DNA from: Hyaloraphidium curvatum SAG 235-1
Taxonomy: Eukaryota > Fungi > Monoblepharomycota
DNA: 64,000 nt
Assembly: GCA_025558095.1 (NCBI GenBank)
Contig: JAIVFI010000040.1
Location: forward strand, 310,001 to 374,000
Direction of reading: 5' to 3'
Both the position numbers and the translations under genes were made by a program. The notes under the pieces were generated by a model. It worked only from the letters and a program-made list of their open reading frames with translations. It had not been told where the DNA came from and ran no database searches. This document shows, piece by piece, positions 958 to 29,177 of the stretch. The stretch's first letter is position 1, and each line of letters begins with the position of its first letter.

Positions 958-3900
958 ATGACCGCCGCGGATCCCGCGAAGACGAAGGCCGCGCTCGCCC
1001 CGCCGGGCCCCGCGTCCCACGCCGCGGACGTCTTCGCGCTCTCGACCGCCGACCTCTCGAAGATCATCGACTTCGACAGCCGCGGCGACGCCGACTACGT
1101 GCAGCGCGTGTTCCACGCAGAGGCCGGCGGCCAGGCCGGGCTCGCGCAGGCCCTGCGCACCGATTTTGACAGGGGCCTCGACTGCTTCGCGCCGGGCGAG
1201 GCCGGTGCCGCTGTGCCGCAGGCAGCAGCCCGCTCCGGCTTCCTCGGGGGTCTGTTCGGGGCCGGGACAGCCAGCGAGAGCTCGCAGGCGCTGCAGCCCC
1301 GCGACGCCGCCGAGCGCGTGCGCCTCTACGGCATCAACAAGGTCGAGGTGCCACCCAGGCCCTCCCTGCTCAAGTTGATCTGGGACTTCATCAAGACCGA
1401 TGTGCGTTCCGTGTTGTCTGCCGTCTGCTCTGCGCACCTGACGTCGGATCCGCCACAACCCCTCAGGTCATCGTGCAAGTGCTCCTCGTCGGAGCCACCA
1501 TCGTCCTTATTCTCGGCACGGCCACCAACCCCGAGCGCGGATGGTACGAAGGGACCGCCATCTTCGTCGCCGTCGGCATCGTCCTGGTCGTCACGAGCCT
1601 GAACGACTACATCAAGGAGGGCAAGTTCCGCAAGATGATGGAGCTGGGCAACGACAGGACGGTCGGTGTTTGCAGAAGCCGAGGCTGCCATTCGCATTCC
1701 GACTCAAAAGACGTCTGCAGATAAAGGTCATTCGCGGCGGGCAGTCCATCACCGTCTCGACCTTCGACCTCCTCGTCGGCGACGTCGTCATCCTCTCGGT
1801 CGGCGACGAGATTCCCGCCGACGGCTTCGTCATCAGCTCCTCGCGCCTGGCCGTTGATGAGTCCCCGCTCACGGGCGAGCCCATCGCCGTCAAGAAGGAT
1901 CCCGTGTCGGCACCCTTCGTGTTCGGCGGCACCTTTGTCGGCGAGGGCTCCGGCACCATGTGCGTCACCGCCGTCGGCCGGCATTCTGCTGGCGGCAAGA
2001 TCCAGCACCTGCTCTTCCTCCGCGGCGGCGGCAAGGCCGACGACGGGGACAGCATCGCAAGCAGCACTTCCGACTTCAAGGGCGCCACCGACAACGTCGG
2101 CACCGCCGAGATGACCCCGCTCCAGCTCCGCCTGCGCAAGGTCGCCATCCTCGTCGGCAAGGTCGGCGTCGCCGCGGGCATAGTCACCTTCCTGGCCCTC
2201 TCGATCCGCTGGGCGCTCGGGCTCGCGAACCAGCTCAATTCGGGGACCCCGTTCGAGGCGAGCATGCTCATCGGAGTCGTCGAGGCCTTCGTGGTCGGGG
2301 TCACCATCGTCGTCGTCGCCGTTCCTGGTGCGTGCACGGCGCCCTTGTCCAGCGCAGACTGTTGACTTCCACCGCTTCCCCCAGAGGGCCTCCCGCTCAC
2401 CGTCACCATCCTGCTGGCCTACTCGATGCTCCGCATGATCAAGGAGAACTGCTTCGTGCGGCACCTGGACGCCTCCGAGACCATGGGCGAGGCCACCTGC
2501 ATCTGCACCGACAAGACCGGCACGCTCACCGAGAACCGCATGACGGTGGTCAAGGTGCTCTCCGGGGGCCGCAGCGTCGAGCTGGAGCGCGCGGGGGCCG
2601 CCGCCGAGGACCCCGCGGCGGCGTTCGGGGCGCCCGTGAGGGAGCTGCTCGCCGAGGCCGTCAGCGTCAACTCGACCGCTTTCATCAGGCAGGCCGAGCC
2701 TGCAGCCAAAGGCAAGCCCGCCGGCGGGGCGCCCGAGTTCGTCGGCTCCGCGACCGAGGGCGCCATGCTCGTGTTTTCGGGCAGGATCGGGTACCCCGAC
2801 TACGAGGCCATCCGCAAGAGCACCGAGACGGCCGAGAATGGGGTCTGGCCCTTTTCTTCGGTCCGCAAGCGCATGTCCACCCTCGTCGTCAAGCCCCACG
2901 GGTACCGCCTGCACGTCAAGGGCGCCTCGGAGATCCTGCTGGGCCTCTGCACCCGCCGCACGTCGTCGACCGGGGACATCGCGCCCGTTCCGATCTTGCC
3001 CGCGGAGCGCGCCGACCTCGAGCGGACCATCCGCGAGTGGGCCTCGGAGGGGCTCAGGACCATCGGCATCGCCTACAGGGACGTGGAGAAGCTGCCCGAC
3101 ATGTCGGCCGGCGAGGCGTCCGGCGAGGGCGCCAACCCGCTCGAGACGGACCTCGTCTTCCTCGCTCTGGTGGGGATCAAGGACCCGCTGCGCAAGGAGG
3201 TCCCCGCGGCGGTGGCGGCCTGCCAGGGCGCGGGCATGGTCGTGCGCATGGTCACGGGCGACAACATCCTGACGGCGACCAAGATCGCGGCCGAGTGCGG
3301 GATCCTCGACGTCAGCAAGGGCCACGTCGCCATCGAGGGGCCCGAGTTCCGCGCCATGACGGACGACGAGAGGCGGGCCATCCTGCCCAGCATGCGCGTG
3401 CTCGCACGGTCGAGCCCCTCGGACAAGTTCATCCTGGTCTCGTTGCTCCGGTGGGTGGTCTCGGGGCCCACTCCTCGCGCATCCACTGACCTTCCTTCCC
3501 GTCTCCAGCGCGCTGGGCGAGACGGTTGCGGTCACGGGTGATGGTACCAACGACGCCGCCGCCCTCAACGAGGCCGACGTCGGCTTCGCCATGGGCATCT
3601 CGGGCACCCAGATCGCCATGAACGCCTCCGACATCGTGCTCACGGACGACAACTTCTCCTCCATCGTCAACGGCATCCGCTGGGGCCGCAACGTGTACGA
3701 CGGCATCCGCAAGTTCCTGCAGTTCCAGCTCTCGGTCAACGTCATCGCCATCGTACTCACCCTCGTCGGCTCCGTCGCCTGGGGCCGCGCGCCGCTCAAC
3801 ACCGTGCAGCTCCTCTGGGTCAACCTCATCATGGACTCGCTCGGCGCGGTCGCCTTGGCTTCGGACCGGCCTGGCGAGGAGATCCTCAAGCAGAAGCCGC

Positions 3901-4639
3901 ACTCGCGCAGCGAGCACGTCATCAACAAGGGCATGTACTTCTACATGGGTTGCATGATCGTGTTCCAGCTGGCTATGCTCCTGTGTCTGTTGTTCTTCGG
4001 CGAGACCATGGTGGGTGGACGTCACAAGCCGTTCAGCATCGCACTGGCTGACGATCTCCGCAGGTCATGTACACCGAGACGCCCGGCGAGGTCTGCGACT
4101 ACAACCCGTACACGGTCGGCCACGAGGCGACCTGGCTCGACAGCTGCCGCGGCACCTGGATCCTCACGGTCACCTTCACCACCTTCATCATGCTCCAGAT
4201 CTTCAACCTCGTCACCTGCCGGCAGCTGGACTTTGGCCTCAACGTCTTCCGCGGCCTCGACCAGAACTGGATCTTCCACGCCATGATCGCCGGCATCGTC
4301 GCCGTGCAGGTCGTCGTCGTGCAGTTCGGCTCGGGCTTCGTGGGCACCGTTCCGCTCGGCTGGCGCGAGTGGCTCCTCTGCACCGCCTGGGCCTCGCTGC
4401 TGCCGATATACGTCGTCCTCACCCGGATCGCGCGGAGGGTGTTCCTCGCCTGGTGGGATCCCAGCCACCCGCAGCCCGCGCGGGGGGAGATGGTCGAGGC
4501 GGGCAAAGCGGCCGAGGTCGCGATTGCGGTGCCCCTGGCGCCGCTGCGGGAGTCGCCTTCGGAGTCGACGCTGGGTGGCGGGGAGGAGGTCGGGAAGGAG
4601 GTGGACAAGGTCAAGCGGGAGGGTACGGACCTCGTGTAG
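958..4639 (+). CDS. PMC1: P2B (PMCA/PMC1-type) calcium-transporting P-type ATPase, multi-exon
   Basis: Motifs: DESPLTGE, PEGLPL (rebuilt across intron 2328-2384), ICTDKTGTLT, KGASE, MVTGDN, VTGDGTNDA, QFQLSVN, VQLLWVNLIMD. Introns at 1402-1466, 1662-1720, 2328-2384, about 3451-3508 and about 4011-4063. Stop TAG at 4637-4639. Confidence 0.95.
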
Positions 4640-20873: not shown

Positions 20874-23280
20874 ATGGCCATTGAGCCCGCCGGACCGCAG
20901 CACTTGTATGCAGCCGGGATTCGCGAGGGCCCGCCCCGCGGACCTTCGCATTGCCGAGCCCAAGGACGCTGCGGGGGACGTGCGGCCGCCGCCTTCCTCA
21001 TCCTCTTCCTCCTTTTTGCGTTCGCCTCGCCGTCCGCGGTCACCGCGCGCCGTGTCACGGCGATTGCCGCCGGCGGCGGACATAGCCTCGCCCTGCTCGA
21101 CGACGGCACCGTGCGCGCATGGGGCCTGGACCACCGCGGCCAGACGGACGTGCCCCGCGGGCTCGTCGGCGGGCGCCAGATCGGCGCCGGCGGTGATTTT
21201 TCCGTCGCCCTCCTGTCGAATGGATCCGTTGCGGTGTTCGGGGAGGGCGTGTGGAACCAGACCCGTGTGCCACCCGGAATCCAGGGCCACATCCGGGAGG
21301 TGGCCGTCTACGCGTGGCACACGCTTGCTCTTTTAAGCAACGGCTCTATTGTCGGCTTTGGGGACAACACCTACGGCCAGTCGGATGGCCCTTCTTCGGT
21401 CTGGCCCCTGCGGCAGCTCTCGGCCGGCCGCGGAGGCTTCAACCTCGTGCTCCTGGCCAACGGCACCGTCGCCGCTTGGGGTGACGACAGTTCGGGGCAG
21501 TGCAAGGTACCCAACTTGGGCCCGAGCGTGCAGAGCGTTTCCGCAGGAGGGGACCATGCCATTGCGCTCCTCGCAAATGGATCCGTCGTTGTCTGGGGTT
21601 CAAACCAGCTAGGGCAGCGGATGCTGCCGCCAAATCTCCCAGAAGCGAGACAGATCGCTGCCGGGTACTACTGCTCCCTCGTGCTCCTCAGGAACGGCTC
21701 CATCGTCGCGGCCGGGGACAACTCCTTCGGCGTCCTGAACGTGCCGCCCTTCCCACCCGGACGACGGCCGCTCAGAATATCAGCCGGATTTGCCCATGCG
21801 CTCGCGTTGATGGACGATGGCGGCATCATCGGCTGGGGTTGGAACCACGAGGGACAAGCCACGGTACCTGAGGATCTGCGCAGCCGACCGAATGAGTCCC
21901 TCGTACCTACTTCCCTTGTACCTACTCTGTCGAGCGCCACGAGTACTTTCGCAACCACTTTTGCCATTCCGACAACAGCCCGCACAATTGGAACTGAAGC
22001 TACGATGACACTCACGTTGACATCGTCCTCGGCGACCGCCAGCCTTGAACCAACTTTAGGCGCTTTGGGAAGCTCGACAACACTTGCGGGTCCTCCGGTC
22101 GGAGCCATCATCGGCGGAATCGTTGGAGCCGTGCTGGTTCTGCTTGCCATCGGTGGGCTCTTGTGGTGGCGGTCGCGGCGTCGGACTCGTGCCCGGGGCC
22201 CCGATCCATACAGCCCCGAGGATGCCAAAGAGTGCTCAGACCCCCAGCTGGATGCAAAGAGCACGACAGAGGCCAAGCTGGCCGATTCCGGTCACAACGA
22301 GGCGCCTGATTGGACGCTGATTGCGTCTTCAGCCACCGCCGTCGCATCGAACGCGCTCGTGTCATCCTCCCGGGCAACATCTGTTCCAGCCGTCACCGAA
22401 CACTTCGTGGTCATTTCTGGGCTCAGGACCGTGCAGGCTTCCGACATTCAGGTCGACGAGTCGAGGAAGCTGGGCGAAGGGGGCTTCGGCACGGTGCACG
22501 TCGGCCTCCTCCGCGGATCCGTCCCGGTAGCCGTCAAGCGGATCAAGGGCGGGATGGACGAGAGCACGCTGCGCTCCTTCAGGAAGGAGGTCCAGGCCTG
22601 GACCGGGCTCGTGCAGCGCAACGTGCTCCCCCTCATGGCCGTCTGCCTGGATCCGCCGATGATGGTCACGGACCTCGTCGAGTGCGGCAATCTCCGGCAG
22701 TTCCTATCGCAGAGGGACTGGGACGTCCGCATCGCGCTCGCCCTCCTGCTAGACGTATCGCACGGCATGGCCTACATCCACTCGGAGGGGATCGTGCACG
22801 GGGACCTGAAGCCTCAGAACATCCTCGTCGACCGCGGAAACCGCGCCATGGTGACGGACTTTGGGCTGGCCCGCCTACAGCGGGAGACGACGACGACCGC
22901 CACGCCGGGGACCCATGCGCCCGGGACGCTGGCGTACCTGGCGCCCGAAGTCCTGGGGGGCAGCAGGCCTCGGAAGCCGGCCGACGTGTACTCTTTCGCC
23001 ATGACGGCGTACGAAGCCCTCGGCGGCGGTTGCAAGCCATTTGCTGGTATTCCTACGGAGGCCGTGAGTGAAAAGGTCGCCGGCTGGACGATTTCTGATT
23101 CGCATCCAGGTCGCCTTCCAAGTACTCGCAAACCGGCGGCCTGCTCGACTACACGAGCTTACGCAAGACGCGTGGGCTCTTTGCGAGGACTGCTGGACGC
23201 ATGCCGCCAAAGAGCGGCCCACTTTTGCCGAGCTTGTGCCGAGACTTGCCTCATTGCAAGATCGCCAGGCGGGACCGTAG
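20874..23280 (+). CDS. receptor-like TKL protein kinase with an extracellular RCC1-repeat domain
   Basis: Signal peptide FLILFLLFAFASPSAVTA, about 7 RCC1-like repeats (IAAGGGHSLALLDDGTVRAWG), Ser/Thr-rich stalk and TM IIGGIVGAVLVLLAIGGLLWW-RSRRR. Kinase motifs LGEGGFG, VAVK, HGDLKPQN, DFG, GTLAYLAPE. Intron 23064-23109, last exon ...CEDCW...RPTF. Confidence 0.9.
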
Positions 23281-23380
23281 CTTTGCGAATCAACCAGATT
23301 CTCAATTCAATCACCGAGGCAAACACAAATGTGTGCAATGGTTTCGAAGCTCGTTTCCCGCCGCCGCCCGCTGCGCCTCC

Positions 23381-24904
23381 TCAACCGGGACAGAAGCTCT
23401 CGAGGGTGAAGAACACGCCGACCCCCTTGAGCAGCGTGTAGAACGCCGCAAGCACCGTGAGCCCCGTCACGACGGCCGTCCGAAGGGCGCCGTAGTCGAC
23501 TACGAACCCGAGATACCGGGCCTGCACCTTGGAGACGTCGGCGAACGAGTCCAGGAGGGCAAGGTGCTCTCCGATCCTGGCGGCGGCGTCCCGGGGCGGG
23601 GAGGGCGAAAGCAGGAGCAGCCGGCGGAGCTCTGTCCGCGCTGCCGCGTAGAGGGATCCTACGGCGGCTACCTCGCGGTTGGCTTCGGCGACGTGGTACA
23701 TGTCCGTCAGGAAGAAAATGAGGTCCAGCAAGATAACGGCTATGGACCACGCGGTGATGCACGATCCGACGGCGACGTTGATCACGAGGTTGACCACTTC
23801 GGAGAGGAGAAAGATGGTGAAGAGGGACTGAGAGGCAGCGGTGGCGGCGAAGATGCCCGGCCACGTGGAAGAGAGGCTGGCGTGAAGGCGGATGTAGAGC
23901 TCCTCTTCAGGGGGTTGGGGGAGGGGGTCTCCGTCTCCAGACGCTTCCAGGATTCCTTGGCACCGGGCGAGCAGCGATCGTAGGGACAGCCTCACCGCAC
24001 GGTTTTGAAGCCGAAAGGTGCCGGGGAAGACGCGTTTAAAGCGCAGCATGATGCCGGACCAGCCCCACAGGAAGATGCCGACGAGCAGCAATAGAGCAAA
24101 GATGCACCAACCCGACGTAAAGAGCTCGTGGCCGAAAGTAACGAAGGCCGTGTAGCAGCGGAAAAAGACGAAGGCGATCCATAAGAGATATTGCCCCGCG
24201 GTCTGCGCGATCCATCTGGCGCCGTAGTCCTTGGGCAGGGGCCCGGCACAAGAAGCGAGGGGACATGGGCAGCGCTGGTCGCCGGAGCGATGGTCCATGA
24301 GCAAGAAGTCAAAGTCGTGCGGGGTCTTTGAACCGGGGACTGGGCGGGGGCTCGGGACGGACGGGGCGTCCTTGCCAATCTCGGCGTCCGCGTCGGCGCG
24401 GCCTAGCCCCACGAGCTCTTGCCAGCGCACGACACCAGCCAAGAAGTTGCCGTCCAGGGTTGCCGGCCGGGCGGCCTTGGGCGATGACCCGACCAGGGCC
24501 GAGCGCTCCCTCCTATGGGTGCTGAGCGCGAAATACAGGAAGGGCAGCCCGAACGAGATGCACAGGGCGACGGTGCCACCGGCCAGTTGCCTGGCACCGA
24601 AGCGGCCGTCATTGAGGCGGAATGATGCGGCTATGAGTCCGCTCGTGGGAATGCTGACGAGGAGCAGCTGGAGCGCAGCCGGCCGGCGGAGGATGGGCCG
24701 TACGGCGTGGTGCAGCCGAAGCATGAGCCGGAGGGCGCGGTGCGGCCGCAGAGTGCGGAGTGCGGCGTCGTACGTCAACGGCGACGCGTCGCGCGCCTCG
24801 GCGGCGGGGTCGGTGTCCGGAGGCAGGAAAACAGCGTCGCCCGGTCCCGGGGGGGAGGGAAGGAGCGCGAGCCACGCGCGTGGCGCAAAGTCGCCCGCGG
24901 CCAT
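23381..24904 (-). CDS. 7-transmembrane protein, candidate 7TMIC (gustatory-receptor-like / DUF3537-like) ion channel
   Basis: Seven hydrophobic segments, long helical linkers between TM4-5 and TM6-7, and a C-terminal ARYLGFVVDYGALRTAVVTGLTVLAAFYTLL. Intronless. Confidence 0.6.
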   Translation of the reverse strand: MAAGDFAPRAWLALLPSPPGPGDAVFLPPDTDPAAEARDASPLTYDAALRTLRPHRALRLMLRLHHAVRPILRRPAALQLLLVSIPTSGLIAASFRLNDGRFGARQLAGGTVALCISFGLPFLYFALSTHRRERSALVGSSPKAARPATLDGNFLAGVVRWQELVGLGRADADAEIGKDAPSVPSPRPVPGSKTPHDFDFLLMDHRSGDQRCPCPLASCAGPLPKDYGARWIAQTAGQYLLWIAFVFFRCYTAFVTFGHELFTSGWCIFALLLLVGIFLWGWSGIMLRFKRVFPGTFRLQNRAVRLSLRSLLARCQGILEASGDGDPLPQPPEEELYIRLHASLSSTWPGIFAATAASQSLFTIFLLSEVVNLVINVAVGSCITAWSIAVILLDLIFFLTDMYHVAEANREVAAVGSLYAAARTELRRLLLLSPSPPRDAAARIGEHLALLDSFADVSKVQARYLGFVVDYGALRTAVVTGLTVLAAFYTLLKGVGVFFTLESFCPG

Positions 24905-25172
24905 CGCAGTGAAGGAAGCGCGGGACGTTCGGGCGTTGATCGCGGGGACAACGGAGAGGCGCAGATCGTCCGCGCACGCGCCGGAACACCGCACCCGAGA
25001 GCATATGGCGAGCGCCTTCCATCGCGGCCGCACCCAGGAGCACGTCAGAGCGTTGAAGATCTCTAGCTTGACGCCACTCAGTCAACATCATGGCGTAACA
25101 CGCGTGGCCTGCCCGCCGTCAGTTGAATTCCGCTCTCTTTGGAGCCATTCTAATCGGCATTCGTGTCCACAG

Positions 25173-25373
25173 GACAAGGAGCGGAAAGCAATCGTCGAGA
25201 ACGTGCTGTCACTGCGCAAACAGGGAACGGATAACGACCTGTGGTTGCTAATCGAGAGGTGTTGGGACGAGGATCCACTCAAGAGACCGAAAGCTCCTGA
25301 GGTGGTGCAGAAGCTCAAGTACATCATTGCGAAGAACAAGCTGGCACGACCGGCGGAGCTGGGAGGAGGCTAG
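25173..25373 (+). pseudogene. orphan terminal exon of a protein kinase (subdomain XI)
   Basis: Branch point CTAAT and acceptor ...TCCACAG at 25172, followed by DKERKAIVE...LWLLIERCWDEDPLKRPKAPEVVQKL*. No upstream kinase exons are adjacent. Confidence 0.65.
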
Positions 25374-25395: not shown

Positions 25396-27528
25396 TTACA
25401 GAACCCTGCGCTCGAGCGACCTGATCAGCCCCGTTGCCTCGTCCAGCACCACCCCGAACTCGACCCTCCCTCCCCCGGGCATTCTGACCACCGTTCCCTC
25501 GAACGGATCCTCCAGCGCGTGCCTCTGCATGCCCGGTCCGCCCTTGTTCCCCGGCAGCATCCCCACCAGCTCCGCGATCTGCTCCCTCCCCCTGGCCACC
25601 CCCGCCGGCGAGCGCGGGTCCCACGACCCGTCCTCGGCAAACAGTGCCGCGGCCGCCTGCCCGTCCCTGGCGTCGACGGCGCCCAGGAACCTCGCCAGAG
25701 CCTCGCGCGGCGACCTGCGCGGGGCGTATCCGCGGTGGAACAGCCTCTCGGCCTCGTGCGAGCCGGGCTTGCCGATCCCCGAGGCGTACAACGCGGCGAC
25801 GTCGGGGTTCTCGTGGCTGCGGCGATAACCCGACGCCCGATCGGCGGCGTAGATCCCCTTTGCCCGCTTCTCGAGGATAAGGGGGTCGTCAGACTTGGGC
25901 TCCCCGCCGCCGCCGAGGCACCCGCCCACGCAGGCCATGACCTCGATGAAGGCGAACCGCTTCCAGTCGTCCGTGGAGAGGAGTTCCTGCGCCGCGGCGA
26001 TCCCCGAGCACACGGCGACCTCGCCCAAGCCGTCGACCTTGGCCGACTTGACCCCCTTGCGCACCCCGCGCACGGCGTGGAAATCCAGCGCGCCCAGCTC
26101 GGTCTTGCCGGCGAGGTGGAAAGCCGAGCGCAGCGCGGCCTCCATCACCCCGCCGCTGGCCCCGAAGATGACCGCGGCCCCGGACGACCCGCCCAGGGGC
26201 GAGTCGTACGCGCCGTCGTTGTCCAGCGAGGCGAAGGGGATCCCGCGGGCGCGGATCATGCGCGCCAGCTCGCGGGTGGTGACCACGGCGTCGATGTCCC
26301 CGCGCAGGTCGGGCCGTACGGCCTCGTCCTTCTTGGCCGTACAGGGCATCACCGACACGACAAAGGGCTCCTTGGTGCCGTCGGCAAAGGCGGGGCCGAG
26401 GGAGGACGGGAAGGGACCGCGCTTGGCGAGGGCGCCGAGCATGCCCTGCGGCGATTTGGTAGTCGAGAGGTGCGGCAGCAGGTCGGGACGGTTCAGCTCG
26501 AGGTAGTTGACCCAGCCGGGGCAGCAGCTCGTGAACAGCGGGAGAGTGCCGCCGCTGCCGACGCGCTCGAGAAGCTCGGTGGCCTCTTCCACGATGGTCA
26601 AATCCGCGGCAAAGTTGGTGTCAAAGACGTAGTCGAAGCCCAGCATGCGCAGCGCGTTGACGAGGCGGCCCGTGGAGACGGTGCCCGGTGCCAGCCCAAA
26701 CTCCTCGCCGATGGCGATGCGGGTGGCCGGGGCCGTCTGCACGACCATGATCCGCTCGCGGGCGTCGAGCTCGTGCAGCACGCGGTGCCAGTCCGGCCGC
26801 TCGATGAGGGCGCCGACGGGGCACACGGCCGTGCATTGCCCGCACGAGATGCAGGGCGTCTCGCCCAGCGGGCGGTCAAACACCGTCACGGGCACGGCCG
26901 ACCCGCCGCGCTCGGCGAAGCCGATGGCGAAGATGGCCTGGCCCTCCTCGCCGCAGGCCTGCGCGCACAAGCCGCACTCGATGCACTTGTCGATGTCCCG
27001 CCAGATGGACGGCGACGTGTGGTCCGTCAGGGCGTGCTTCTGGCGCTCGGGGCCGCCGGGCTCGCCGCGGGGCAGCTTGGGCCACCTGTCGTTGAGCTGG
27101 TTCTCCTTGACGAAGGCCTGCAGCTTGCACGCCCCGTCCACCTCGCATTTCTGGCAGTCGTTCGGGTGCCGCGCCAGCAGCAGCTGGGCGTCGGCGCGGC
27201 GGAACGCCTCCAGCTCGGGCGTGTGCGTCCGTATGCTGTCCCCGTCGACGGCCTTCGTCGCGCAAGCGGGCACCAACTTGGAAGAACCCTCGACCTCGAC
27301 GAGGCACATGCGGCAGCGCGCGTGCGGCTCGTAGCGCGGGTGGCGGCAGAACGTCGGCACGCGGCCGCCCGCCGCAGCGACGGCGTCGACGAGCTTTGAG
27401 CCGGCGGGCACCGAGACGGGCCGGCCGTTGACCGTGAGCCGCAGGGATCCCGCGCCGCCGCCCGGAGGCGCCGCCGTCGCAAGCCGACGCGCAGGCTGCG
27501 CCAGGCGCACGAGGCCCCGGGCCAGCAT
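25396..27528 (-). CDS. hydA: [FeFe]-hydrogenase (CpI-like long F-domain) with a predicted mitochondrial presequence and a C-terminal SnoaL/NTF2-like domain
   Basis: H-cluster motifs L1 FTSCCPGW, L2 MPCTAKKDE and L3 EVMACVGGCLGGGG. [2Fe-2S] site (PTFC...CRMCLVE...PAC), His-ligated cluster (HPNDCQKC...CKLQ) and two [4Fe-4S] sites (CIECGLCAQAC; CISCGQCTAVCP). Small-subunit motif RRSHENP. N-terminus MLARGLVRLAQPARRLAT. Intronless, 710 aa. Confidence 0.96.
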   Translation of the reverse strand: MLARGLVRLAQPARRLATAAPPGGGAGSLRLTVNGRPVSVPAGSKLVDAVAAAGGRVPTFCRHPRYEPHARCRMCLVEVEGSSKLVPACATKAVDGDSIRTHTPELEAFRRADAQLLLARHPNDCQKCEVDGACKLQAFVKENQLNDRWPKLPRGEPGGPERQKHALTDHTSPSIWRDIDKCIECGLCAQACGEEGQAIFAIGFAERGGSAVPVTVFDRPLGETPCISCGQCTAVCPVGALIERPDWHRVLHELDARERIMVVQTAPATRIAIGEEFGLAPGTVSTGRLVNALRMLGFDYVFDTNFAADLTIVEEATELLERVGSGGTLPLFTSCCPGWVNYLELNRPDLLPHLSTTKSPQGMLGALAKRGPFPSSLGPAFADGTKEPFVVSVMPCTAKKDEAVRPDLRGDIDAVVTTRELARMIRARGIPFASLDNDGAYDSPLGGSSGAAVIFGASGGVMEAALRSAFHLAGKTELGALDFHAVRGVRKGVKSAKVDGLGEVAVCSGIAAAQELLSTDDWKRFAFIEVMACVGGCLGGGGEPKSDDPLILEKRAKGIYAADRASGYRRSHENPDVAALYASGIGKPGSHEAERLFHRGYAPRRSPREALARFLGAVDARDGQAAAALFAEDGSWDPRSPAGVARGREQIAELVGMLPGNKGGPGMQRHALEDPFEGTVVRMPGGGRVEFGVVLDEATGLIRSLERRVL

Positions 27529-27830
27529 GGTGTTTCGATGTGGAGGAGTTGGCGGTGAGTCGGAGCGCGGTGACTCACAGTGTGTCCCCATCCCCACGTG
27601 AACGTCATTGCCTCCCAGGACGAATCTCGTAAAGAAGAAACAGGGGAAGGCGAGACAAGGCCCATCACGAGTGGGAAGGACTTTTCTTCTAGATGCCAGC
27701 AAACTACGAATCTCTCACTGACGGTCTCATGGAGGATTGCGGCGACTGGGATCGTGGATGATTCTCCAGCGAGCTGGGGCCTCATACGCCCCTAAACTTC
27801 CCTGTTCACACGACACGAACCATCGGCAGC

Positions 27831-29177
27831 ATGCTGGGCAACGAAAAGAACCCCGCATGGAATATCCGCGATGTCGCTGCGGCCTGCAGGGCCCCCGAGG
27901 AGGACTTTGCCGCCCTCTGCGAACGCGCCGCCGAAATCGCGCGCCTGCGGTTCGACGCGCTTCGCTCCCAGGGCAAACGCGCAGCCGCTGGCCGCCTCGC
28001 CGACCGGCTAGCCGGCATCACTCTCGTGGAGAAGAGGGCGCGGGATTACGCGTCATTTCCGGTCGTGCTCCCCGAGCTGCTCCGCGTCGTGGCGCGGTTC
28101 CTCGGGCCCCAAGACCAGCTCTCCCTCGCGCTCGTATCGAGGGAGTCTTACTAGCAAGTCGCACCGCTGATGCTGCGCGAGATTGACTTTGCCAAGGCGA
28201 GCCGGGGGCGGTACCTGAGGATGAAGGCGCTCGGATTGTTGCCTTCGCCAGCGGAAATGTGGCGGACTGCTAGCCCTGCCTACCACCTCTTCAAGGAGTT
28301 CTCCGCCGACAGGGCTCCGCGGCTGCCGCAGAGCAAGTTCTACGTCAGGAAGCTCGTCCTTGGCACCGACCCATTCGACCACTTCAACGTTAGCTACGGC
28401 TCCTTCTCTTTCGGCACAAAGTTCCCATCTGCCTTGACCAGCCTGACGGACCTGACGTTCGCCACGGACTCGAATGGCTGCATGGCCACCTTTGGCGAGG
28501 CCGACCTCTCGATGCTGACGCGGCTCGAGATCCGCTTCTACAAGGAGCAATCCGACTACGTGATCCCCATCAACACCAAGTTCGGCGACCTGCGTGAGCT
28601 GCGGTACAAGGGTTTCCAAGTGCATTCGCTGTTTGCCGCTCTGGAAAGGCAGCGGCAGGACCGCGTGAGGCTGGACATCCAGTTCTTCCCGGAACCCCAC
28701 CGCGAATTCCGGGACGTGTCCGACTGGACCGTGTCTCGGATCGACACCCTTGGCCTATTCAACTTCGAAGACGCCGCAGACATGCTCCGCCGCTGGTCCG
28801 CCCTGCACCCGCGCCGGATCTTTGTCGACCCGCAGGAGGAGTACTGGAACAAGCAGCTCTGCACCCTTTCGTGGGCACACCTGGTCCGCAGGGGCAGCGT
28901 CGAAGAGCTCGATCTGTGGCGGCTGCCGTCGGCCGCGCTCGCTTACGGGTTGCCGCCGAAGCTGAAGCGGCTCAAGGTCGCGAGGCTGGTGCTCTGGCAC
29001 CGGCCGGCGCAGTTCGCGGCGATCGAAAAGGTCCTGTTGGAGAAGCCCGCGGGGTGCGTTTTGGATGTGGGCGAGATCGGAACGGACGAGCGCGCGCTCG
29101 ATGAGGATAGTGACCCCGAGGCATCGATGTGGCGGTGGATGGTCGGGCCGGCGCAAGAGGCTGTTGCGAGCCAGTAG
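27831..29177 (+). pseudogene. F-box-like/LRR-like protein (family B), copy 3, with a premature stop
   Basis: VLPELLRVVARFLGPQDQLSLALVSRESY*QVAPLM. The in-frame TAG at 28152-28154 sits where the paralogs have I or L. The rest of the frame is open to 29177 (DPEASMWRWMVGPA). Confidence 0.78.

What the first reader, a model, noticed from the sequence alone, without database searches (positions are those of the whole stretch)
25396..27528. Mitochondrion-targeted [FeFe]-hydrogenase in an apparently oxygen-using fungus-like genome
Seen in sequence: an intact, intronless 710-aa ORF with all three H-cluster signatures, including the proton-transfer Cys (TSCCPGW) and the L2 Lys, plus four accessory Fe-S sites. 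It starts with an Arg-rich, acid-free leader (MLARGLVRLAQPARRLAT). Established knowledge: these motifs separate true hydrogenases from Nar1/NARF, and among fungi H2-producing hydrogenases are best known from the hydrogenosomes of anaerobic Neocallimastigomycota. Inference: the neighbours include O2-dependent enzymes (PhyH, BVMO, FAD monooxygenase), so this organism may have a facultatively H2-producing mitochondrion. No maturase (HydE/F/G) is in this window.
Basis: partly seen in the sequence, partly recalled or inferred. Interest (0 to 1): 0.85.

Follow-up and report, generated by a model that had tools for sequence, protein, structure and literature searches.

The report
Orphan iron hydrogenase gene in aerobic fungus
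The aerobic water fungus Hyaloraphidium curvatum carries an intact, transcribed gene for an iron-only hydrogenase with a mitochondrion-type leader, but it is an unusual type with an extra tail domain, and neither the fungus nor the bacteria that share it have the helper enzymes known to build the hydrogen-making metal centre.

Summary
Window 25396-27528 (-) is an intact, intronless 710-aa [FeFe]-hydrogenase gene. It has every H-cluster and accessory Fe-S ligand and a 28-residue basic, acid-free leader.

- The genome is Hyaloraphidium curvatum. The gene is truly fungal: it has host codon usage, lies 22 bp from a spliced kinase gene, and is covered by RNA contigs. An uncultured relative has it too, at 67% identity.
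- It is not the hydrogenosomal type. It belongs to a separate, fully supported clade marked by a C-terminal NTF2/SnoaL-like domain. That clade also holds aerobic sulfur- and iron-oxidising Proteobacteria and a choanoflagellate.
- HydE, HydF and HydG were not found in the fungal genome, nor in 17 of 17 bacterial carriers tested. The fungus also showed no true PFO, no PFL and no second NuoF.

What remains is a conserved hydrogenase catalytic pocket kept under purifying selection without any known maturation system.

The mRNA 5' end is unresolved: the public model starts at Met74 and lacks the leader. A word search of earlier scan notes for hydrogenase or maturases returned nothing.

The parts
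25396..27528 (-). hydA coding sequence, 710 codons plus stop, no intron
   Evidence: GC3 is 0.93, like host genes (Elp3 0.96).
27445..27528 (-). Codons 1-28: N-terminal extension that resembles a mitochondrial presequence
   Evidence: Absent from bacterial homologues. It has 4 Arg and no acidic residue, with a hydrophobic moment of about 0.7. pLDDT is below 50 for residues 1-24. The relative P0002 and Acanthoeca P0285 also carry basic extensions.
27220..27444 (-). 2Fe-2S ferredoxin-like domain (residues 29-103)
   Evidence: Pfam Fer2_4. C61, C72, C75 and C89 are invariant.
27091..27198 (-). His-ligated 4Fe-4S site (residues 111-146)
   Evidence: Pfam NADH-G_4Fe-4S_3. H121, C125, C128 and C134 are invariant.
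26788..27006 (-). Two 4Fe-4S ferredoxin motifs (residues 175-247)
   Evidence: Pfam Fer4 families. Eight invariant Cys, 182-236.
25906..26751 (-). H-cluster domain (residues 260-541)
   Evidence: Pfam Fe_hyd_lg_C, E 1e-79. Motifs at 333, 394 and 529.
25717..25878 (-). Small-subunit-like domain (residues 551-604)
   Evidence: Pfam Fe_hyd_SSU, E 4e-16.
25399..25713 (-). C-terminal NTF2/SnoaL-like domain (residues 606-710), the mark of this clade
   Evidence: Pfam SnoaL_4 over its cut-off. Domain model pLDDT 87. Foldseek matches 5tgn (E 1e-6) and ketosteroid isomerases (TM up to 0.65). The tail is present in all close relatives.
27529..27720 (-). Probable 5' untranslated and promoter stretch. It holds an in-frame upstream ATG at 27591.
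   Evidence: GC3 of the open upstream frame is 0.53, against 0.93 in the gene. Sequence read. RNA contig 2 covers it.
27332..27463 (.). Gap between the two RNA contigs, 79% G+C
   Evidence: Contig 1 ends at 27331 followed by adapter letters. Contig 2 starts at 27464. GC.
20874..25373 (+). Convergent neighbour: RCC1-repeat protein kinase gene. Its stop lies 22 bp from the hydA stop.
   Evidence: Pfam RCC1_2 and protein kinase. The last exon is read.
25118..25172 (+). 55-nt GT..AG intron of the kinase gene, spliced out in the RNA contig that also covers hydA
   Evidence: Joint 25117 to 25173.

Best explanation
This is a genuine nuclear gene of Hyaloraphidium curvatum, inherited vertically within its lineage and transcribed. 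It encodes an M3-type [FeFe]-hydrogenase with a probable mitochondrial presequence and a C-terminal NTF2/SnoaL-like domain.

It belongs to a distinct clade. That clade is shared with aerobic sulfur- and iron-oxidising Proteobacteria and at least one choanoflagellate. The gene stands alone in the two bacterial loci examined, and none of the 18 genomes tested (this fungus and 17 bacterial carriers) has HydE, HydF or HydG.

Mechanism, inferred. Electrons from a low-potential matrix donor enter at the 2Fe-2S cluster. They pass over three 4Fe-4S clusters to the H-site. The intact proton relay and cofactor pocket point to proton/H2 chemistry there. Any di-iron part of that site must come from a route other than HydEFG, because the gene has evidently worked after moving between domains as a single gene. 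It is not part of a PFO- or PFL-fed hydrogenosome-type pathway.

Confidence by step:
- Identity, ancestry and absence of maturases are shown (about 0.9).
- Organelle targeting is inferred (about 0.65).
- H2 chemistry at the H-site is inferred (about 0.4-0.5).
For: Gene and domains.

Fungal origin:
- The genome holds NCBI's H. curvatum Dbp7 at 100% identity.
- Codon usage matches the host.
- An RNA contig splices the adjacent kinase intron and runs across hydA to 27331.

Vertical descent and constraint:
- P0002 lies on a eukaryotic contig with VTC/SPX and Dbp7 genes.
- Its Dbp7 is 58% identical to H. curvatum and roughly 33-43% to other named fungi.
- Its hydA is 67% identical to this one.
- dN/dS is about 0.16.

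Clade:
- SH-aLRT support is 100.
- Eukaryotic rows fall outside a 99%-supported proteobacterial crown.
- The Acanthoeca member was found.

No maturases:
- In the fungus.
- In 17 bacterial carriers: HydG 0, HydF 0 over the cut-off, HydE 0. The same searches found true HydG, HydF and HydE in Thermotoga and Bacteroides controls.
- HypD is in only 3 of 18 genomes.

Stand-alone loci.

Pocket and proton path: APATR, TSCCPGW, KSP, MPCTAKKDE, FGASGGVMEA, EVMAC..GC and the TIVEE..E..R residues are invariant or nearly so.

Model: pLDDT 89.8, pTM 0.90, with the tail well ordered.
Against: - No known way to make the CO/CN-ligated di-iron centre exists in these genomes.
- The hosts are aerobes, and the known enzyme class is O2-sensitive.
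- Three Thiomicrospira species that Greening et al. assigned a group A1 [FeFe]-hydrogenase (presumably this type; their sequences were not compared here) did not consume H2 in culture (PMC4744846).
- RNA contig 1 stops at 27331 with adapter letters. That fits a transcript start just before Met74 and the public 637-aa model. Such a product would lack both the leader and two 2Fe-2S ligands.
- No targeting predictor was available.
- Absence calls rest on six-frame family searches of one assembly of 55 contigs.
Confidence: 0.45

Rival explanations
1. The protein never receives a di-iron subcluster. It carries only standard Fe-S clusters from housekeeping assembly. It acts as a redox or gas sensor, an electron-transfer module, or an enzyme with different chemistry at the open cubane, with the NTF2-like tail binding a small hydrophobic ligand or partner.
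For: - No HydEFG in 18 of 18 genomes, and no HypD in 15 of 18.
- The genes stand alone in their loci.
- The hosts are aerobic.
- The clade has an added ligand-binding fold.
- No H2 uptake was seen in Thiomicrospira species reported to carry a group A1 [FeFe]-hydrogenase.
- A gene kept after moving between domains as a single gene argues for a function that needs no dedicated helpers.
Against: Residues needed only to hold the di-iron centre and to relay protons (C335, K399, M394, M531, E314, E318, S359, R322) are invariant or nearly invariant in alignments of this clade with working hydrogenases. In Nar1-type proteins, which lack the centre, these are known to be lost (established knowledge).
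Confidence: 0.33
2. One reading: a classical, facultatively H2-producing mitochondrion like that of Acanthamoeba, or a hydrogenosome-like pathway as in anaerobic fungi.
For: - Intact catalytic motifs and an MTS-like leader.
- The gene is transcribed.
Against: - No HydE/F/G.
- No true PFO: best 78 bits, against a cut-off of 911.
- No PFL, and only one NuoF.
- The gene lies in a different clade from the canonical eukaryotic HydA sampled here (Chlorella, Pedinophyceae, Paratrimastix).
Confidence: 0.07
3. The main product is the annotated 637-aa form starting at Met74. It would be cytosolic and lack a 2Fe-2S cluster. The upstream codons would be untranslated leader sequence.
For: - RNA contig 1 ends at 27331, 22 nt upstream of the Met74 ATG at 27309, followed by adapter letters.
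- The public model P0001 equals residues 74-710.
Against: - Residues 29-73 align with bacterial homologues and with the relative P0002, including ligands C61 and C72. dN/dS there is about 0.36.
- Coding-type GC3 begins exactly at the ATG at 27528.
- RNA contig 2 covers 27464 onward, which includes that ATG.
- The 132-nt gap is 79% G+C, which can cause coverage loss.
Confidence: 0.12
4. A bacterial contaminant, an assembly artefact or a decaying relic of a recent transfer.
For: The closest named relatives are bacterial, and the gene has no intron.
Against: - It lies inside a 476-kb contig between intron-bearing eukaryotic genes.
- One RNA contig joins it to a spliced neighbour.
- GC3 matches the host.
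- It is shared with a related fungus at 67% identity under purifying selection.
- It branches outside the bacterial crown.
Confidence: 0.02

Closest known systems
Putative group A1 [FeFe]-hydrogenases of Thiomicrospira, Hydrogenovibrio, Thiomicrorhabdus, Thioclava, Hyphomonas and similar aerobic Proteobacteria (listed by Greening et al., discussed in PMC4744846)
   Same: - Same domain order, including the C-terminal NTF2/SnoaL-like tail.
- 59-62% identity over the full length.
- Same clade with 100% support.
- The genomes likewise lack HydEFG.
   Different: - The fungal protein has a 28-residue basic N-terminal extension.
- It shares two short deletions in the tail with its fungal relative.
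- It branches outside the bacterial crown.
- None of these proteins has been characterised biochemically.
Hydrogenosomal and other canonical eukaryotic HydA (Neocallimastix, Trichomonas, Chlorella HYD1, Paratrimastix)
   Same: H-cluster domain, catalytic motifs, and in part the M3 accessory domains. Some carry organelle-targeting extensions.
   Different: - Only 42-48% identity to the representatives found here.
- No NTF2-like tail.
- A separate clade.
- By published accounts those organisms have HydE/F/G and usually PFO or PFL. This fungus has none.
- No Neocallimastix sequence was in my tree.
Thalassiosira pseudonana hydrogenase gene
   Same: [quoted passage not shown] It is treated as an outlier among eukaryotic HydA (PMC4989108).
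   Different: I had no handle on its sequence. Whether it has the tail or belongs to this clade is untested.
HydA subunit of electron-bifurcating HydABC (Thermoanaerobacter kivui, 8a6t)
   Same: The best solved relative. It has the same four accessory clusters and small-subunit domain.
   Different: - No HydB or HydC partner genes next to the bacterial relatives.
- Only the single complex I NuoF in the fungus.
- The solved protein has no NTF2-like tail.
Nar1/NARF cytosolic Fe-S assembly factor
   Same: The hydrogenase large-subunit fold.
   Different: This protein keeps all the H-cluster pocket residues and the accessory domains. The fungus has a separate Nar1-like gene on contig 2.

Membership tests
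[FeFe]-hydrogenase, group A (M3 architecture) | H-cluster motifs L1 (TSCCPGW), L2 (MPCxxKxxE) and L3 (ExMxCxxGCxxGG) | tested here: met
   At residues 333, 394 and 529. Invariant with canonical enzymes. Fe_hyd_lg_C E 1e-79.
[FeFe]-hydrogenase, group A (M3 architecture) | Accessory 2Fe-2S, His-ligated 4Fe-4S and two 4Fe-4S clusters, plus the small-subunit domain | tested here: met
   Pfam domains. All 16 ligands are invariant. Aligned end to end with 8a6t HydA1.
[FeFe]-hydrogenase, group A (M3 architecture) | HydE, HydF and HydG maturases in the same genome | tested here: not met
   Positive controls passed in Thermotoga and Bacteroides.
[FeFe]-hydrogenase, group A (M3 architecture) | H2 evolution or uptake activity and a CO/CN-ligated di-iron centre | not testable with these tools
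   Needs gas chromatography, infrared spectroscopy or EPR.
SnoaL-tailed proteobacterial/eukaryotic HydA clade | C-terminal NTF2/SnoaL-like domain after the small-subunit domain | tested here: met
SnoaL-tailed proteobacterial/eukaryotic HydA clade | Placement inside the clade | tested here: met
   SH-aLRT 100 in three trees.
SnoaL-tailed proteobacterial/eukaryotic HydA clade | No maturase genes in the genome | tested here: met
   0 of 17 bacterial carriers and the fungus.
Hydrogenosome-type H2 pathway of eukaryotes | Pyruvate:ferredoxin oxidoreductase or pyruvate formate-lyase as electron source | tested here: not met
   The PFO model's best hit is 78 bits against a cut-off of 911 (partial PFO-like domains only). 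PFL gave no candidate.
Hydrogenosome-type H2 pathway of eukaryotes | HydA in the canonical eukaryotic clade | tested here: not met
   Chlorella, Pedinophyceae and Paratrimastix fall outside the query's clade.
Hydrogenosome-type H2 pathway of eukaryotes | Organelle location | tested here: inconclusive
   There is a basic leader, but no predictor was available and the 5' end is not settled.
Electron-bifurcating HydABC | HydB (NuoF-like) and HydC (NuoE-like) partners | tested here: not met
   A single NuoF locus in the fungus. No such genes beside the bacterial relatives.
Nar1/NARF | Loss of the di-iron pocket residues and of the N-terminal ferredoxin domains | tested here: not met
   The pocket and domains are kept. 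A separate Nar1-like gene lies at contig 2.

The most novel reading that the evidence does not exclude
The SnoaL-tailed enzymes are a maturase-independent hydrogenase lineage. They are present in the mitochondria of at least two opisthokont lines (a fungus and a choanoflagellate) and in aerobic Proteobacteria. Either they acquire a catalytic di-iron centre by an undescribed route that needs only housekeeping machinery, or they perform new chemistry at the H-site. The eukaryotic copies may descend from one early acquisition: a tree with the three eukaryotic sequences together is not rejected and scores slightly better.
Probability: 0.25. Interest if true: 0.9.

Novelty: new variant of a known kind. 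Interest (0 to 1): 0.62.

Why it matters
How hydrogenases in organisms without HydE/F/G become active, if they do, is an old open question (Giardia, Entamoeba, Thalassiosira). This clade makes it testable. It offers culturable aerobic bacteria and a culturable fungus that each carry a single stand-alone gene with an intact catalytic pocket.

A hydrogenase that matures without the three helpers, or that tolerates aerobic hosts, would matter for H2 biotechnology. A non-hydrogenase use of this fold would be new enzymology.

For fungal and mitochondrial evolution, it shows a second, independent kind of HydA in Fungi. It also warns that a 'hydrogenase' in an aerobic eukaryote's genome does not by itself indicate anaerobic H2 metabolism.

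Tried and rejected
- Family searches of the whole genome for HydE, HydF and HydG found nothing beyond generic GTPase domains.
- As a check on sensitivity, I found all radical-SAM loci and classified them: MoaA, CDKAL1-like, HemW, Elp3, two RlmN-like, lipoyl synthase and one unclear. None was HydE or HydG.
- I tested the [NiFe] Hyp machinery as an alternative source of CO/CN ligands and rejected it. HypD is in 3 of 18 genomes and not in the fungus.
- Bacterial gene neighbourhoods showed no conserved partner.
- The look-up of the window's own gene model returned nothing.
- Literature searches for Hyaloraphidium, monoblepharids, Acanthoeca, Thioclava or SnoaL together with hydrogenase found nothing relevant.
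- A search from the choanoflagellate protein found no further named eukaryotes.
- The metagenomic contig of P0271 could not be assigned to a domain.
- Only one run held the locus, and it is kept as contigs. Expression level, strand and true transcript ends could therefore not be read.
Full report
**Observation**

The minus strand is open from 27702 to 25396, and the ATG at 27528 gives a 710-residue protein.

Pfam finds these domains:
- a 2Fe-2S ferredoxin-like domain (residues 29-103)
- the His-ligated 4Fe-4S motif of NuoG-type proteins (111-146)
- two 4Fe-4S ferredoxin motifs (175-247)
- the hydrogenase large-subunit domain (260-541, E 1e-79)
- the small-subunit domain (551-604)

The best solved relative is HydA1 of the Thermoanaerobacter kivui HydABC complex, aligned end to end at E 2e-145.

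The three H-cluster motifs lie at residues 333, 394 and 529. In a 46-row alignment that includes canonical enzymes, all sixteen accessory-cluster ligands are invariant. So are C335, C396, C533, C537 and K399, and the proton-path residues E314 and E315. E318 and R322 are nearly invariant there, and invariant within the 12-row alignment of the clade.

**Whose gene it is**

Earlier notes of this scan named the organism as Hyaloraphidium curvatum. I tested this. A Dbp7 helicase that NCBI assigns to H. curvatum is encoded at 100% identity on contig 9 of this genome, with one short intron.

The hydrogenase gene lies inside a contig of 476 kb. Its stop codon is 22 bp from the stop of a convergent RCC1-repeat protein kinase gene.

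The one public run that holds the locus is RNA in practice. Its 9,168-letter contig omits a 55-nt GT..AG stretch (25118-25172) of the kinase gene, then runs on across the hydrogenase gene to 27331.

Third-position G+C of the gene is 0.93, like host genes such as Elp3 (0.96). The open frame upstream of the ATG has 0.53, typical of non-coding DNA. Contamination and assembly error are excluded.

**A relative has it too**

The closest protein in the databases is P0002, at 67% identity. It sits on a 55-kb contig assembled from a public run. That contig also carries a VTC/SPX gene, a split homogentisate dioxygenase gene and a Dbp7 gene.

Its Dbp7 is 58% identical to that of H. curvatum, roughly 33-43% to other named fungi and 34% to Gonapodya. 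P0002 therefore comes from an unsequenced relative of Hyaloraphidium.

The hydrogenase is at least as conserved as this housekeeping helicase. Non-synonymous change is about one sixth of synonymous change, which is itself near saturation. Both proteins share two small deletions in the tail, and both have N-terminal extensions. The gene was present in their common ancestor and has been kept under selection.

**Which hydrogenase it is**

About 120 of the best database matches are 690-residue proteins at 58-63% identity. Where named, they come from Thioclava, Hyphomonas, Thiomicrospira, Hydrogenovibrio, Thiomicrorhabdus, Pleionea, Thioalkalispiraceae, Gallionella and Acidithiobacillales. All have the same C-terminal tail.

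A model of the tail alone (pLDDT 87) matches NTF2-like proteins and ketosteroid isomerases. In the full-length model (pLDDT 89.8, pTM 0.90) the tail is well ordered and residues 1-24 are disordered.

Outside this group, identity drops to 48% or less. The canonical eukaryotic enzymes I could name (Chlorella HYD1, a pedinophyte, Paratrimastix) are 45-48% identical.

The trees show the following:
- The tailed proteins are one clade with 100% support on a long stem.
- The proteobacterial sequences form a 99%-supported crown.
- Hyaloraphidium with its relative, a metagenomic sequence, and a 755-residue protein from the choanoflagellate Acanthoeca spectabilis (EukProt, with a basic N-terminal extension) all branch outside that crown.
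- A tree holding the three eukaryotic rows together is not rejected and has a slightly better likelihood (AU p 0.64).

The number and direction of transfers are therefore open. What is clear is that this is not the enzyme type of the anaerobic gut fungi. No Neocallimastix sequence was in my trees, so that statement rests on the other canonical eukaryotic representatives and on the tail.

**Maturases and electron sources**

Family models for HydG and HydE found no candidate at all in the 31.9-Mb genome. The HydF model matched only the generic GTPase part, at 32 bits against a cut-off of 326.

To test whether the search was simply blind, I located every radical-SAM domain in the genome (eight loci) and classified each one. 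They are MoaA, a CDKAL1-like enzyme, HemW, Elp3, two RlmN-like enzymes, lipoyl synthase and one unclear protein with weak likeness to activating enzymes. None resembles HydE or HydG.

Other results for the fungus:
- The PFO model gave only partial hits of up to 78 bits, against a cut-off of 911.
- PFL gave no candidate.
- There is one NuoF gene, the complex I subunit, and no second copy.

The classical hydrogenosomal or Acanthamoeba-type pathway is thus not encoded.

**The same holds for the bacteria**

In Thiomicrorhabdus xiamenensis and Thioclava pacifica the gene stands alone, with no hydEFG or hydBC nearby. Nineteen of 98 genomes in the Thiomicrorhabdus family carry it.

In 16 full-length carriers plus Thioclava, the counts were:
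- HydG: 0 of 17
- HydF: 0 of 17 over the cut-off
- HydE: 0 of 17

The same searches scored true maturases in the Thermotoga and Bacteroides controls. HypD of the [NiFe] system, another conceivable source of CO/CN ligands, is in only 3 of 18 genomes and not in the fungus.

The literature knows these bacterial genes only as putative group A1 hydrogenases without biochemical data. Three Thiomicrospira species reported to carry a group A1 [FeFe]-hydrogenase did not consume H2 in culture (PMC4744846). I did not compare their sequences, so I assume rather than show that they are of this type. A parallel in eukaryotes is Thalassiosira pseudonana, whose hydrogenase gene has no identifiable maturation factors (PMC8003979). 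I could not test whether that gene belongs to this clade.

**How it most likely works**

Shown: a chain of four accessory clusters leading to an H-site. The cubane ligands, di-iron pocket and proton relay of that site are all conserved under purifying selection, in hosts that lack every known route to the di-iron centre.

Inferred: because the gene has been retained after crossing between bacteria and eukaryotes as a single gene, its function must need nothing beyond housekeeping Fe-S assembly. Two readings fit.
1. The pocket does receive a catalytic centre by an unknown route, and the protein exchanges electrons with protons or H2. In the fungus it would probably act as a redox valve in the matrix under low oxygen.
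2. The site holds only the cubane, and the protein senses or transfers electrons, or does other chemistry, with help from the NTF2-like tail.

But the two are close (about 0.45 against 0.33).

**The start of the protein**

The public gene model equals residues 74-710. RNA contig 1 ends at 27331 with adapter letters, 22 nt upstream of the Met74 ATG. This fits a transcript start there.

Against that:
- A second RNA contig covers 27464 onward, which includes the ATG at 27528.
- The uncovered 132 nt are 79% G+C.
- Coding-type composition starts exactly at 27528.
- Residues 29-73 align with the bacterial proteins and with the relative, including two cluster ligands.

I judge the 710-residue form likely. 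The targeting claim remains an inference, because no predictor was available.

**Novelty and verdict**

I found no paper on a hydrogenase in Hyaloraphidium, monoblepharids or Acanthoeca, nor on a SnoaL-tailed hydrogenase. A word search of earlier scan notes on this genome returned nothing on hydrogenases or maturases.

The finding is real and of moderate to high interest, but for a different reason than proposed. It is not evidence of an H2-producing mitochondrion. It is a fungal member of an uncharacterised, maturase-less variant of the [FeFe]-hydrogenases.

Noticed in passing
window 27307-27528 (-): The public gene model for this locus (P0001, 637 aa) equals residues 74-710. It omits the leader and two ligands of the 2Fe-2S cluster, so surveys based on annotated proteins would miss the presequence.
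   Followed up: yes
window 27890-28132: Short stretches here also match other parts of RNA contig 1 on the opposite strand, with a few mismatches. This suggests a repeated or paralogous element upstream of hydA.
   Followed up: no
G000:C25:233511-234746 (locus L017:1012-2247): A radical-SAM open frame of 412 aa has only weak likeness to AmmeMemoRadiSam and anaerobic ribonucleotide reductase activating enzymes. It is the one radical-SAM gene of the genome I could not classify.
   Followed up: partly
G000:C17:14025-16847 (L016) and G000:C26:440987-442870 (L019): Two RlmN/Cfr-like radical-SAM rRNA methyltransferase genes, one inside a 941-aa open frame. This is a bacterial-type enzyme, present here in two copies.
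   Followed up: no
G000:C11:566627-567463 and G000:C25:313451-315259: Partial PFO-like domains at two loci (50-78 bits). These are probably parts of other enzymes, such as a Met10-type sulfite reductase, rather than a pyruvate:ferredoxin oxidoreductase.
   Followed up: no
P0121 (EukProt, Cyanophora paradoxa, 4122 aa): A predicted protein with seven hydrogenase-like stretches. It is either a tandem array merged into one model or a true multi-hydrogenase fusion.
   Followed up: no
L021 (ENA metagenome contig, 12.5 kb), gene at 2051-4354: A deep-branching tailed hydrogenase (P0271/P0122, 767 aa) has an acidic, Gly-rich insert in the tail. Its contig consists mostly of unannotatable ORFs plus an ankyrin gene. 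The host is unknown and may be another eukaryote.
   Followed up: partly
L006:12181-14378: In Thiomicrorhabdus the hydrogenase gene is followed by selenophosphate synthetase and tRNA 2-selenouridine synthase genes. This is not conserved in Thioclava.
   Followed up: no
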